A stretch of 63,751 nucleotides of DNA, the filler included, from Octopus bimaculoides (Eukaryota), in NCBI RefSeq assembly GCF_001194135.2. It is 6 parts of 5 records of this genome, joined end to end, with 100 filler letters (N's around TTAATTAATTAA, not from the genome) between each part and the next. Parts side by side here need not be neighbours in the genome. Positions count along the whole stretch, not along the records: positions 21,332 to 52,613 come from NC_068992.1; 5 more parts are not named here. One strand, 5' to 3'. The notes under the pieces were generated by a model that saw only the letters and a program-made list of their open reading frames with translations, had not been told where the DNA came from and made no database searches. A program made the position numbers and the translations under genes. Shown in pieces: positions 25,720 through 38,035 of this stretch. Every line of letters begins with the position of its first letter. Positions within the stretch are counted from its first letter, which is position 1.

Positions 25720-25955
25720 TTTCACCATTTTAAGTCATTGGACTGCAGCCATGCTGGGGTATCACCTTGAATAGATTTAGTCGAACAAATCCATCCAAAT
25801 ACATTTCTTTTTAAACCTGAAACTTATTCTCTCGAACGATTTGCCGAACCGCTAAGTTACGGGGAAAGTAAAGAAACCAACACCGGTGGTCAAGCGGTGG
25901 TGGACGACCAACACAAACATAAAGGCACACACATATCTATCTATCTCTCTCTCTC

Positions 25956-28974: not shown

Positions 28975-29190
28975 TATTGATTTCAAATTTTGGCACAAGG
29001 TCAGCTAACTCAGGGAGTGGGTAAGTTGATTATATCGACCCTATTGTTCAAACGGTATTTATTTCGTTGACCCCGAAAGGGTAAAAGGCAAAATCGACCT
29101 CCAGATTTGAATTCAGAATGTTGTAACGAACAAAATACCGCTGAGCATTTTCCCCGGCATGTTAAAGATTTTGTCAGCTTGCTGCCTTGC
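28975..29190 (-). mobile_element. SINE family A
   Basis: tttcaaattttggcacaagg...gatttgaattcagaatg...gcttgctgcc. Confidence 0.88.
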
Positions 29191-29700: not shown

Positions 29701-29808
29701 TTTAATAAAATACCAGTTTAGTACTGTTCTCGATATAATTCACTACCCTCTGTCCCTGTATTTCTGGATATATATCTATGTAATGTATTTATTGTTGCTG
29801 TTATTAGT

Positions 29809-30378
29809 GAGGCAGCGAGCTGGCTGAATCGTTACCGCGCCGGGCAAAATGCTTAGCAGCATTTCGTCCGTCTTGAAGTTCTGAGTTCAAATTCTGCCGA
29901 AATTGACTTTACATTTCATCCTTCCGAAGTCGATAAAATAAATACCAGTTGAGCACTGAGGATGATGTAATCGACTTATTCTCTTCACCGAAATTGCTGG
30001 CTTTGTACAAAAATTTGCAACCGTTATTATTAAGGTGGCGAATTAGTGGAATAGTTAGCATGCTGGACAAAATGCTCAGCGACATTTCGTCTCCCTTTAC
30101 GTCCCGAGTTCAAATTCCACCTAGGTCATATTTGCTTCTTATTCTTTCTGGGTCGATAAAATAAATACCAACTCAACACTGGGGTCGATGTAATCAACAA
30201 GTCTTTCTCCCAGCAAATTTTAGGCTTTGAGCCTATAGTAGAAAGGATTATTAAGGTGGCGAATCGTTTGCTCGCCAGGCAAAATTCTTAGCAGTATCTC
30301 GTCCCATGTTAGGTTCTGAGTTCAACTTCAACCGAGGTCGATTTTACCTTTTATTCTTTCTGGGTCGATGAAATAAGA
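29809..30378 (+). mobile_element. Three head-to-tail SINE family A copies
   Basis: Copies at 29809-30022, 30034-30246 and 30255-30378, separated by gttattattaa and attattaa. Confidence 0.9.
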
Positions 30379-30384
30379 ACTAGC

Positions 30385-30850
30385 AGAACAACAAGAACCA
30401 CAAAAACAACAGCAACAACAGCAACAAGTTAATATGCTGCAGGAATCTGTACATCTTTTTTTTACAGCAAACGCAGCAACAATAGAAACCACAATTGCAT
30501 TAAGAAGAAAACCATCAGAAGCCTCAACACCACCAGTAACAACAACAACAACAACAACAACCACAACAACAACAACAACCACAACAACGACGACGACGAC
30601 GACAACAGCTGCAGCAACAACAGCATGACCCCTGTAGACATCATGTCAGAGGAATTTCTACATCTATTTCATAACATATTTCATCACCACGAGAGCAACA
30701 AAAGCACCAACACCCATAGCAACAACAACAACAACAACAAAAACAACAACAGTGGCAGTAGTAACCATCGCAACCGCTACAAAAGCAGCAGCATCAGCAG
30801 CAGCGGCAGCAGCAACAACGACAACGACAACAGCATTAACCACGTGACCC
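30385..30850. repeat. (CAA/CAG)n low-complexity region with internal ~200-bp duplication
   Basis: Direct reading. Repeated anchors aggaat..tacatct and tgacccctgta.acatc. Confidence 0.85.
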
Positions 30851-31482: not shown

Positions 31483-31492
31483 NNNNNNNNNN

Positions 31493-36339: not shown

Positions 36340-36500
36340 GCCTCAACGTAGGCCATCGATGTGTTCTGGGACGACCGGTGTTGGTCTGTTTACGTCCCCG
36401 ATAGTGAAATCGATCTGTTCGACTAAACCCTTCAAGGCGATGCCCCAGCATGATCACAGTCTAATGACTAAGACAAGTAAACGGAAAAAGACACGTTTTA
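36340..36500 (+). mobile_element. SINE family B, internally deleted 3' part
   Basis: gtttacgtcccc...gttcgactaaacccttcaaggcgatgccccagcatgatcacagtc..tgactaagacaagtaaa. Confidence 0.8.
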
Positions 36501-36594: not shown

Positions 36595-37344
36595 TTAAAT
36601 AGCTCCATGATATTGGTTTCAAATTTTGGCACAAGGCCAGCAATTTTGGGGGAGGGGTTATACCGATTACATCGACCCCAGTGTTCAACTGGTACTTATT
36701 TTATCGAACCGGAAAGGATGAAAAGCAAAGTTGACCTCGACGGAACTTGAACTCAGACCAAAAAAACGGACGAAATGTCGCTAAGCATTTTACCCGGCTG
36801 CCTTAAATAGCTCCACAATATTCTTATTTCTTTATTGCCCACAAGGGGCTACACACAGAGGGAACAAACAAGGAGAGACAAACAGATTAAGTCGATTATA
36901 TCGACCCCAGTGCGTAACTGGTACTTATTTTAATCGACCCCGAAAGGATGAAAGGTAAAGTTGACCTCGGCGGAATTTGAACTCAGAACGTAGCGTCAGA
37001 CGAAATACCGCTAAGCATTTCGCCCGGCATGCTAACGTTTCTGCCAGCTCGCCGCCTTAATAACTTAATAGCTCCACAATATTCTTTTCTACTCTAGGCA
37101 CAAGGCCCGAAATTTTGGGGGAGGGGTGTCAGTCGATTAGATCGACCCCAGTACACAACTNNNNNNNNNNGGAGGGGTGTCAGTCGATTAGATCGACCCC
37201 AGTACACAACTGGTACTTAATTTATCGACCCCGAAAGGATAAAAGGCAAAGCCGACCGTAAAGACAGACGAAACACCACTAAGCATTTTGCCAAGCGTGC
37301 TAACTATTCGGCCAGCACGCCGTCTTAAATAGCTCCACAATATT
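36595..37344 (-). mobile_element. Array of three SINE family A subtypes separated by four copies of a 19-20-bp target repeat
   Basis: Repeats TTAAATAGCTCCATGATATT 36595-36614, TTAAATAGCTCCACAATATT 36803-36822, TTAATAGCTCCACAATATT 37065-37083 and TTAAATAGCTCCACAATATT 37325-37344. SINEs at 36615-36802, 36823-37056 and 37084-37324 have different 3' tails. Confidence 0.93.
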
Positions 37345-37377
37345 GAAAATTAGATTGTCAATCTAATTTACAAATTC

Positions 37378-37592
37378 AAGATGGCGAGCTGGTAGAATCG
37401 ATAGAACGACGGACAAAATGCTTAGTTGCATTTGTTCTGGCTTTACGTTCCGAGTTCAAATTCCGTCGAGATCGACTTTGCTTTCAGCCTTTCAAGATCG
37501 ACAAAATAAGTATTAGTTGAGCATTGTGCTCGACGTGATCGACTGTCACTTTCCCTCAAATTTTCAGGCCTTTTGCCTGTTGTAGAAAGAAT
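37378..37592 (+). mobile_element. SINE family A
   Basis: atggcgagctggtagaatcg head, gagttcaaattcc B box, ggccttttgcctgttgtagaaaga tail. Confidence 0.88.
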
Positions 37593-38035
37593 TGTAGTAA
37601 TTCAGCGATTTCGTTGTGTCAGAGTGGAGTTTTATTTATTTATTTTTTTTCTCTAGGAAATACAATGTCGTTTGTCTGTGGGCATAGCATCGTTCGTAAA
37701 AGGCTACTAAACGCAGGACTAGATCTTCAGGCTGAAGGATGGATGTATTATTAACAATCCTGTCGTGCATTAGTCACAAAAAATTATCATGAAAGCGTCA
37801 AGAGACAGCAAACACAACCTCGTATGTTTTTAAAGAAGGCTGGCTCTTCTAGTCATGCCTATGTCAATTAACGGACTTCAGATTTATTATAATCTATAAA
37901 AATGTATGGGATATTTACCACAAGTTACTTCGCGAGACATTCGGTCGTTTCTGTGATTATTCACCTCGTCAGATATTGTGGTTTAACTCAGAGCAGATCA
38001 TTTTTTCTTTTTCATTTTTTTTTTTTCATGCGTGA

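What the first reader, a model, noticed from the sequence alone, without database searches (positions are those of the whole stretch)
36595..37344. Repeat-spacer-like array: three different SINE subtypes stacked in one 20-bp target site
Seen: four copies of TTAAATAGCTCCACAATATT (one with 2 substitutions, one with a 1-nt deletion) alternate with three SINEs, all on the minus strand. Each SINE has a different 3' tail (...gaaacc, ...aagaaataag, ...gtagaaaag) and they appear to differ in divergence, which argues against simple tandem duplication. Established: target-primed reverse transcription duplicates the target site. Inference: independent insertions reused the same nick, regenerating the target each time and growing a CRISPR-like ledger of retroposition events. 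In SINE orientation the target begins AATATT, which matches the tail of other copies here (gaaaccAATATT at 778, 1050, 47978), so 3' microhomology priming could drive the reuse.
Basis: partly seen in the sequence, partly recalled or inferred. Interest (0 to 1): 0.8.

Follow-up and report, generated by a model that had tools for sequence, protein, structure and literature searches.

The report
Three SINEs stacked in one site
Three different short retroposons (SINEs) inserted one after another into the same 18-20-base cut site of an animal genome (said to be octopus), re-copying the site each time; this is a clean example of the known "multiple insertion" route to tandem transposons, not a new kind of system.

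Summary
The 20-mer occurs four times (36595, 36803, 37064, 37325) and nowhere else in the piece. It alternates with three minus-strand SINEs.

The 10-N gap inside the third SINE is an unmerged contig overlap: 41 identical bases lie on each side. Collapsed, that SINE is 190 nt and colinear with another copy.

The three SINEs are not local duplicates:
- They are 73-78% identical to each other.
- They never form a clade in 300 bootstrap trees.
- S1 and S3 pair with copies about 6-11 kb away (83% and 99% bootstrap).
- Each has a different tail, a different defect and a different 5' junction.

The 20-mer is target DNA, not SINE sequence. Its first six bases, AATATT, match the motif that starts the target-site duplication of nearly every SINE in the piece.

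Best explanation: three independent target-primed insertions re-used one staggered-cut site that sits in a 31-nt AT-rich palindrome. A fourth, opposite-strand SINE lies on the palindrome's other side. The array probably grew at the head end, but that is weakly supported.

This matches the "double insertion" model known for R1, P and jockey elements. A second clear stack and a third ambiguous one lie in the same 31 kb. No orthologous or long-read data could be reached.

The parts
36595..36614 (-). T4, the target copy 3' of the array in SINE orientation: AATATCATGGAGCTATTTAA. It has 2 adjacent transitions relative to the other copies and is followed by unique flank.
36615..36802 (-). S1, a 188-nt SINE with tail type i (...GCCAAAATTTGAAACC). 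It is 5'-truncated by about 25 nt and so lacks the box-A region. Its closest relative is the copy at 47865-47979.
36803..36822 (-). T3, an exact target copy.
36823..37063 (-). S2, a 241-nt SINE with a full head plus 5 extra 5' nt (TTATT, 37059-37063). Its 3' domain and tail are type iii (...GCCCCTTGTGGGCAATAAAGAAATAAG), which is unique in the piece.
37064..37083 (-). T2, a target copy with a 1-nt deletion (ATTTAA to ATTAA) at the junction with the S2 head.
37084..37324 (-). S3, a SINE with tail type ii (...GCCTAGAGTAGAAAAG) and a 23-nt internal deletion over the box-B region. It is 190 nt once the redundant stretch 37161-37211 is removed. Its closest relative is the copy at 43173-43272 (90%).
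37161..37211 (.). Assembly artefact: 10 Ns followed by a 41-nt exact repeat of 37120-37160 (an unmerged contig overlap).
   Evidence: family D2
37325..37344 (-). T1, an exact target copy 5' of the array, preceded in SINE orientation by unique flank. The inferred first-strand nick lies on the + strand between 37344 and 37345 (5'-ACAATATT/GAAAATTA-3').
   Evidence: the nick position is inferred from the TPRT model
37343..37373 (.). A 31-nt AT-rich near-perfect palindrome with 15-nt arms, 93% complementary, and a 1-nt centre. It contains the inferred first-nick sites of the stack and of the opposite-strand SINE.
   Evidence: (I2)
37366..37603 (+). A fourth SINE in the same hot spot, on the opposite strand. 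The body is 37378-37590 (type ii-like tail ...GTAGAAAGA). Its own target-site duplication is ATTTACAAATTC (37366-37377) and ATTGTAGTAATTC (37591-37603).
48971..49414 (-). A second stack of two SINEs: 49185-49397 (tail type i) and 48988-49166 (tail type ii). Three in-register copies of one target word flank and separate them: TAGTTTAAACTGTTTCG, GATATTTCAACTGTTTCG and ATACTTCGACTGTTTCC.
29800..30391 (+). A third, ambiguous stack of three SINEs (29809-30022, 30032-30246, 30253-30391). They are separated by ATT-rich words of only 6-9 nt (GTTATTAGT, GTTATTATT, ATTATT).

Best explanation
Three independent LINE-driven (target-primed reverse transcription) insertions of three different SINE subfamilies used the same staggered cut in one AT-rich site. 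Each event duplicated the 18-20-bp stretch between the two nicks, giving T-SINE-T-SINE-T-SINE-T. This is the multiple-insertion route to tandem transposons. Shown here: the four-fold target word, the unrelatedness of the three SINEs, their three different 5' junctions, and the family's A(A/T)TATT preference at the start of its target duplications. Inferred: the first nick is on the + strand at 37344/37345, inside a 31-nt palindrome that makes the site a hot spot. Also inferred: the outer copy T1 keeps the original nick context, so the array grew at the head end, with S1 first and S3 last (about 0.6 confidence). The array has no evident function. Only S2 keeps both Pol III box regions.
For: - The 20-mer occurs four times in register, with 0 expected by chance. 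Both outer copies abut unique DNA.
- S1, S2 and S3 are 73-78% identical to each other. S3 is 90% identical to the copy at 43173, and S1 is 84% identical (93% in the tail domain) to the copy at 47865.
- NJ bootstrap gives S1+S2+S3 as a clade in 0 of 300 trees, S3+43173 in 99% and S1+47865 in 83%.
- TRF sees no tandem repeat.
- There are three tail types, and the defects differ: a 5' truncation in S1, a 23-nt internal deletion in S3 and 5 extra 5' nt in S2. The 5' junctions therefore also differ.
- The hexamer after the SINE tail is within 1 mismatch of AATATT at 6 of 10 loci, against a 1.26% background (P about 8e-10). In solo copies the hexamer is also present in the upstream duplicate, so it comes from the target.
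- The collapsed S3 is colinear with another copy across the gap join.
- A second stack at 48971-49414 shows the same architecture.
- Four SINEs sit in an empty site of about 45 bp around a palindrome.
- The mechanism is documented for R1 (33-nt junction duplication), P element (8-nt TSD in the junction) and jockey dimers with distinct truncations (PMC5932611).
Against: - No empty, one-SINE or two-SINE allele and no orthologous locus could be examined.
- This is a short-read assembly, and one scaffold join lies inside S3.
- Re-use requires the second nick to fall at the same place three times, although TSD lengths at other loci vary from about 10 to 18 nt.
- A motif-only site model predicts only 0.04-0.08 coincident insertion pairs in this piece. 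Some additional hot-spot factor is needed, and I can only suggest what it is: the palindrome, or help from the resident SINE.
- The order of insertion rests on 2 adjacent substitutions in T4 and on nick-context reasoning. CpG decay here is mild (observed/expected 0.84).
Confidence: 0.78

Rival explanations
1. A single T-SINE-T insertion was amplified by unequal crossing-over or replication slippage between its target-site duplications, and the units then diverged. This mechanism was proposed for TSD1-(SINE-TSD1)n arrays in the blood clam.
For: The architecture T-(SINE-T)n is the same as described in PMC11481361. The target copies are nearly identical to each other.
Against: The units are only 73-78% identical while the four target words differ at just 2 substitutions and 1 indel in 80 nt. 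The three SINEs never cluster (0 of 300 bootstrap trees), and S1 and S3 pair with copies elsewhere. They have three unrelated tail domains, different truncations or deletions and different 5' junctions. TRF finds no repeat.
Confidence: 0.04
2. The array is a short-read assembly artefact: a mis-join or collapse of SINE copies from different loci or haplotypes.
For: The piece has many gaps, several of them unmerged overlaps. One scaffold join lies inside S3. SINEs are classic assembly breakers.
Against: The 20-mer is unique to this place, yet it is joined to three different SINE heads and three different tails within uninterrupted contig sequence (36595-37160 and 37171-37344). Each junction is distinct; T2, for example, has its own deletion plus extra TTATT. 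Reads must contain those junctions. Two haplotypes could not supply three SINEs plus tail-T-head junctions. The overlap at the gap is exact, and the merged S3 is colinear with another copy.
Confidence: 0.07
3. Re-use is not independent of the resident SINE. The incoming cDNA, or its ribonucleoprotein, uses homology to the resident copy. One way is by switching template onto the resident head and copying head plus target word. Arrays would then be regenerated by copying rather than by a second staggered nick.
For: In the stack at 48971-49414 the two heads are 91% identical over the first ~90 aligned columns of the alignment, against 84% or less for any other pair, while the tails are of different types and the T-head junctions are identical. 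In the stack at 29800 the second and third elements share an identical 17-nt junction, ATTATTAAGGTGGCGAAT. Re-use exceeds the motif-only expectation by about 50-fold or more.
Against: In the array under study the three heads and three 5' junctions all differ: the S2-S3 heads are 80% identical, S1 is truncated, and S2 carries extra TTATT. Nothing was copied from a neighbour. The shared heads elsewhere could reflect a shared subfamily or later gene conversion.
Confidence: 0.08
4. Chance coincidence: unrelated insertions happened to land next to each other, and the repeated word is fortuitous.
For: SINE density is high: about 16 copies or fragments in 27.6 kb of non-N sequence.
Against: Zero matches of the 20-mer are expected by chance, against 4 seen in register. 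There are 5 close same-strand junctions against 0.12 expected.
Confidence: 0.01

Closest known systems
Tandem transposon dimers formed by double insertion at one target site (McGurk & Barbash 2018, PMC5932611): the R1 tandem with 33-nt rDNA duplications, P-element dimers with the 8-nt TSD in the junction, and jockey dimers with distinct 5' truncations
   Same: The elements lie head to tail with exactly one copy of the target duplication in each junction. They are demonstrably independent (different truncations). The junction word fits the element's preferred target especially well; here it is a perfect AATATT.
   Different: Here the elements are non-autonomous SINEs of three different subfamilies, there are three events rather than two, and the genome is a mollusc's. 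The evidence comes from one assembled haplotype, not from population data.
TSD1-(SINE-TSD1)n tandem-like SINE arrays in bivalves, especially Scapharca (Anadara) broughtonii (PMC11481361)
   Same: The layout is the same: a SINE alternating with the same target duplication, in a mollusc, with arrays of two or three units being typical.
   Different: Those arrays consist of highly similar units truncated at the same position and are attributed to unequal recombination between TSDs. The units here are dissimilar and differently truncated.
SINE insertion hot spots: CanSINE loci with 4-6 independent insertions and overlapping TSDs (PMC4084570), and the mys element hot spots of Cantrell et al. 2001 (known to me only from the reference list of PMC4084570; the paper was not readable here)
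   Same: SINEs repeatedly and independently use one short stretch of DNA, so SINE presence or absence there is not homoplasy-free.
   Different: In those cases the insertions are mostly in different lineages and have overlapping rather than identical TSDs. Here all events accumulated on one chromosome with the target regenerated in register.
Correlation between 3' microsatellite-like ends of RTE-related SINEs and LINEs and the first nucleotides of their TSDs (Nishiyama & Ohshima 2018, PMC6007223)
   Same: TSDs start with a defined short motif that could pair with the 3' end of the RNA template. There is T-rich DNA just upstream of the nick.
   Different: The motif here is the palindromic hexamer A(A/T)TATT. 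The partner LINE and its clade are unknown.
CRISPR repeat-spacer arrays
   Same: Only the formal pattern matches: a short repeat is duplicated each time a new unit is added, probably at one end.
   Different: There is no adaptation machinery, no leader and no function. The 'repeats' are target-site duplications and the 'spacers' are retroposons. It is not a member in any sense.

Membership tests
Transposon tandem formed by multiple insertion at one target site | Same-orientation, head-to-tail elements | tested here: met
   Three SINE matches lie on the minus strand at 36615-36802, 36823-37063 and 37084-37324.
Transposon tandem formed by multiple insertion at one target site | One copy of the target-site duplication in every junction and at both outer ends, in register | tested here: met
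   Four copies of the 20-mer are present and no others. The junctions were read.
Transposon tandem formed by multiple insertion at one target site | Elements are independent insertions (different truncations, subfamilies or junctions) | tested here: met
   Identity is 73-78%. S1, S2 and S3 form a clade in 0 of 300 bootstrap trees. The tails, defects and 5' junctions all differ.
Transposon tandem formed by multiple insertion at one target site | The junction word matches the element's own target preference | tested here: met
   The word starts with AATATT, the consensus that starts TSDs of this SINE family in the piece.
Transposon tandem formed by multiple insertion at one target site | Intermediate alleles (0, 1 or 2 elements) exist or existed | not testable with these tools
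   No cephalopod sequence could be reached. The metagenome hits were chance matches.
SINE tandem array formed by unequal recombination between TSDs | Units highly similar and truncated at the same position | tested here: not met
tRNA-derived SINE mobilised by a LINE (TPRT) | Flanking target-site duplications of variable length at independent loci | tested here: met
   Solo copies at 28979, 37378 and 47865 have TSDs of about 10-16 nt.
tRNA-derived SINE mobilised by a LINE (TPRT) | [quoted passage not shown] | tested here: inconclusive
   Box-like strings TGGCAGAATCG and GAGTTCAAATTCC are visible by eye in the consensus. ARAGORN calls no tRNA in the piece.
tRNA-derived SINE mobilised by a LINE (TPRT) | 3' tail shared with a partner LINE | not testable with these tools
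   There is no LINE or reverse-transcriptase ORF in the piece and no repeat library was available. All three tail types share a 4-bp stem with a CUUGU loop, which is only a hint.
CORE-SINE superfamily (octopus OR2 is listed as one in PMC4758252) | Conserved CORE central domain | not tested
   The resemblance of ...CTTTCATCCTTTCGGGGTCGATAAAATAAGTACCAG... to the CORE domain is recalled from memory only.
CRISPR array | Short repeats separating unique acquired spacers, with a leader and cas genes, in a prokaryote | tested here: not met
   The units between the repeats are members of a dispersed SINE family. No ORF of at least 75 aa in the piece looks like a protein-coding gene by eye; most are microsatellite- or gap-derived, and none was searched against a protein library. 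The context is a repeat-rich eukaryotic genome.

The most novel reading that the evidence does not exclude
In this genome a resident SINE, or the target copy it regenerates, actively attracts further SINE insertions. Arrays would then grow polarly at the head end and self-reinforce, at rates far above what the A(A/T)TATT preference alone predicts (about 50-fold or more in this piece). That would be a targeting mode not described for SINE/LINE pairs, and a systematic source of tandem repeats and of homoplasy in SINE markers in cephalopods.
Probability: 0.2. Interest if true: 0.6.

Novelty: new member of a known kind. Interest (0 to 1): 0.35.

Why it matters
- **A clear case.** Three unrelated SINE subfamilies and four in-register target copies make it easy to separate "multiple insertion" from "unequal recombination" as the origin of a transposon tandem.
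- **Marker reliability.** SINE insertion in this genome has a defined target motif and local hot spots, so presence/absence markers here are not homoplasy-free.
- **Seeds for satellites.** Such stacks are the proposed starting material for satellite DNA.
- **Possible generality.** If the local excess of stacks (two or three in 31 kb) holds genome-wide, it would reveal something about the specificity of the still unidentified partner LINE endonuclease. It would also bear on how very SINE-rich cephalopod genomes are structured.

Tried and rejected
- **Same or orthologous locus in other assemblies.** Exact-protein look-ups of five ORFs that cross the flanks or junctions all returned nothing on record.
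- **SINE-derived ORFs.** A homologue search with a SINE-frame ORF found no candidates, so cephalopod SINE ORFs are not in that collection.
- **The 20-mer in metagenome contigs.** There were two hits. Both are AT-rich microbial-looking contigs with no SINE, so they are chance matches.
- **The SINE core 24-mer.** It gave 0 hits in both prokaryotic genome contigs and viral contigs.
- **ORF scan for an exon, to reach an annotated gene and its orthologues.** It found only microsatellite and low-complexity ORFs.
- **Rfam.** The only hit was a sub-threshold mir-2513 match, which I attribute to the head-to-head SINEs.
- **ARAGORN and TRF.** ARAGORN found no tRNA. TRF found no tandem array.
- **CpG ancestor for the TG/CA difference between T1-T3 and T4.** This would fix the order of insertion. 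It is possible, but CpG decay in this piece is mild (observed/expected 0.84; CpG columns differ at 19.9% against 15.4% elsewhere), so I kept it only as weak support.
- **Papers not held.** Cantrell et al. 2001 and Albertin et al. 2015 could not be read.

Full report
**What is there.** The word TTAAATAGCTCCACAATATT occurs four times:
- 36595-36614, with two substitutions;
- 36803-36822, exact;
- 37064-37083, with a one-base deletion;
- 37325-37344, exact.

Allowing three mismatches it occurs nowhere else in the window, and shuffles give no matches. The three intervals between the copies are each matched by a SINE profile on the minus strand. In SINE orientation the locus reads: unique flank, T1, S3, T2, S2, T3, S1, T4, unique flank.

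**The gap.** The 41 bases left of the Ns (37120-37160) are identical to the 41 bases right of them (37171-37211) (family D2). This is an unmerged contig overlap. Other 10-N gaps in the piece show the same feature. With the overlap collapsed, S3 is 190 nt. It aligns without any indel across the join to an independent copy at 43173-43272, at 89-90% identity. Continuity is therefore likely. The join still lies in a repeat in a short-read assembly, so it is not proven.

**The SINE family.** The piece holds about 16 copies or fragments. An alignment of 13 of them shows:
- a head starting AAGG(C/T)GGCGAGCTGG;
- a conserved centre, ...TTCGGGGTCGATAAAATAAGTACCAGTTG...;
- three kinds of 3' end: type i ...GGCCTTGTGCCAAAATTTGAAACC, type ii ...GGCCTTGTGCCTAGAGTAGAAAAG, and a longer type iii ...GCCCCTTGTGGGCAATAAAGAAATAAG.

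Type iii is seen only in S2. All three tails can form a 4-bp stem with the same CUUGU loop, and type iii uses different base pairs in the stem. This hints at a shared recognition hairpin. The folds are not significant on their own.

ARAGORN calls no tRNA. The A- and B-box-like strings are my reading by eye. The family's resemblance to CORE-type SINEs rests on my memory, not on a test; octopus OR2 is listed among CORE SINEs in PMC4758252.

**Are the three SINEs independent?** Yes, on four counts.
- Pairwise identities are low: S1-S2 73%, S1-S3 78%, S2-S3 74%. By contrast S3 is 90% identical to the copy at 43173, and S1 is 84% identical to the copy at 47865 (93% in the tail domain).
- In 300 bootstrap neighbour-joining trees S1, S2 and S3 never form a clade, and neither does any pair of them. 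S3+43173 appears in 99% of trees and S1+47865 in 83%.
- The structures differ. S1 lacks about 25 nt of the head, S3 lacks 23 nt around the B-box region, and S2 has a different 3' domain.
- The three 5' junctions differ: T1|AAGACGG; T2 with one T missing, then G, then TTATT, then AAGG; and T3|(AA)GGCAGCC.

TRF reports no tandem repeat. Three different junctions and three different tails are the signature of three integration events.

**Is the 20-mer SINE sequence?** No. None of the other copies carries it. T1 is preceded by non-SINE DNA and T4 is followed by non-SINE DNA. The reconstructed empty site has no other match in the piece. Two short overlaps with SINE features do exist:
- The final AA coincides with the AAGG start of the head. 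This is a 2-nt microhomology, so the duplication is 18-20 nt.
- The first six bases, AATATT, match the family's target motif, described next.

**Target preference.** The six bases after the tail are A(A/T)TATT-like at nearly every copy. Six of ten loci are within one mismatch of AATATT, against a background of 1.26% (P about 8e-10). Counting each stack once gives 5 of 8 (P about 2e-8).

In solo copies the hexamer is also present in the upstream duplicate:
- AGTATATG... upstream and AATATATG... downstream at 28979;
- ATTTACAAATTC and ATTGTAGTAATTC at 37378;
- ATTATTTACC and AATATTTACC at 47865.

The hexamer is therefore target-derived, or equivalently a priming microhomology, rather than a fixed SINE end. 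This fits the correlation between 3' repeats and the first TSD nucleotides reported for RTE-related elements (PMC6007223). It does not explain why this particular site was hit three times.

**Recurrence and statistics.** Same-strand SINE neighbours 25 bp or less apart number five in the piece, against 0.12 expected under random placement (P < 5e-5). The three junctions outside the finding still give P = 2e-4.
- The stack at 48971-49414 has two SINEs of different tail types and three in-register copies of (TA)TTTCAACTGTTTCG. It is a clear second case.
- The stack at 29800-30391 has only 6-9-nt ATT-rich spacers and is ambiguous.
- A site model weighted by the hexamer predicts 0.04-0.08 coincident pairs of insertions in the piece.
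- Setting aside the finding (which was selected) and the ambiguous stack, one coincidence gives only P of about 0.02-0.05.

The excess is therefore suggestive rather than established.

**Local context.** The outer edge of T1 lies inside a 31-nt near-perfect AT-rich palindrome (37343-37373, I2). On the palindrome's other side a fourth SINE sits on the opposite strand, with its own duplication. Under the standard TPRT geometry (established knowledge), the first nick is on the strand opposite the element, at the 5' edge of the duplication. The inferred first nicks then fall at 37344/37345 on the + strand and 37365/37366 on the - strand, both within the palindrome arms. Four SINEs therefore entered an empty site of about 45 bp. 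I infer that local DNA structure, together with a perfect AATATT, makes this a hot spot. This is not shown.

**Mechanism and polarity.** Each event nicks one strand at the AATATT edge of the target and primes reverse transcription of a SINE RNA. It then nicks the other strand 18-20 bp away and fills in, duplicating the target.

After the first event, the copy next to the upstream flank keeps the original first-nick context (5'-ACAATATT/GAAAATTA-3'). At the other copies a SINE tail replaces that context. At six independent loci the base 3' of the inferred nick is a purine in five (my reading; not significant). After the S3 and S2 tails it would be C.

T4 is also the only target copy with substitutions: TG to CA, two adjacent transitions. 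These could be the two decay products of an ancestral CpG, but CpG decay here is mild. Both points favour growth at the head end, with S1 first and S3 last. I put this at about 0.6.

**Rivals.**
- *Unequal recombination between duplications* is the explanation given for similar-looking clam arrays (PMC11481361). It is contradicted by the dissimilarity of the units.
- *Misassembly* is unlikely. A unique word is joined to three different heads and tails within continuous contig sequence, and each junction has its own peculiarities. Only long reads can close this question.
- *Homology-assisted copying from the resident SINE.* This is prompted by the other two stacks. In one, neighbouring heads are 91% identical; in the other, two elements share an identical 17-nt junction. 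It does not fit this array, whose heads and junctions all differ.

**Comparison and novelty.** Tandem transposons with the target duplication preserved in the junction, made by repeated insertion at one site, are described for R1, P element, jockey and bacterial IS elements (PMC5932611). That study also notes that dimers form at sites matching the target consensus especially well, as is the case here. SINE hot spots with several independent insertions are known in carnivores (PMC4084570).

I found no description of such stacks in cephalopods in the searchable literature. The finding is therefore a new and unusually clean member of a known kind: heterologous subfamilies and three events. It is not a new system, and the CRISPR comparison is only formal.

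**Limits.** No cephalopod sequence other than this piece could be reached with the tools. The organism, the subfamily consensi, the partner LINE, the orthologous locus and the genome-wide frequency are therefore all untested.

Noticed in passing
window 48971-49414 (minus strand): A second SINE stack: two elements with different tail types and three in-register copies of one target word. Their heads are 91% identical over the first ~90 aligned columns, against 84% or less for any other pair. This suggests gene conversion, a shared rare subfamily, or template switching onto the resident copy.
   Followed up: partly
window 29800-30391 (plus strand): Three SINEs lie head to tail, separated only by ATT-rich words of 6-9 nt. 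The second and third share an identical 17-nt junction, ATTATTAAGGTGGCGAAT. The same TTATT precedes the head of S2 at 37059-37063, so TTATT may be a 5' extension carried by some source genes.
   Followed up: partly
window 37343-37373: A 31-nt near-perfect AT-rich palindrome (15-nt arms, 93% complementary). SINE insertions flank it on both sides with their heads facing it.
   Followed up: partly
window 31483-31492, 42049-42058, 37161-37170, 48438-48920: Several assembly gaps are flanked by exact repeats of the sequence before the gap (24, 26, 41 and 40 nt). They are unmerged overlaps, so gap lengths in this assembly are often negative in reality.
   Followed up: partly
window 36370-36470; also 25733-25794 and 41391-41531: Another interspersed repeat family, unrelated to the SINE studied, has copies at about 80-90% identity. 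One copy lies just beside the array.
   Followed up: no
window 37284-37420 (minus strand): A sub-threshold Rfam match to mir-2513 (26 bits against a gathering score of 89, E = 0.033). It probably reflects the hairpin formed by the inverted heads of S3 and the SINE at 37378 (32 of 43 positions identical) around the palindrome.
   Followed up: partly
tails at window 36615-36650, 36823-36860 and 37084-37120: All three tail types can form a 4-bp stem with the same CUUGU loop. The type iii stem uses different base pairs (three of the four positions changed), so it may be a conserved recognition hairpin for the partner LINE.
   Followed up: partly
whole piece 21332-52613: The piece is very rich in microsatellites ((CA)n, (GA)n, (TA)n, (CAA)n and (ATT)-like runs). 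Most large gaps are bordered by them. No ORF looks like a protein-coding exon.
   Followed up: no
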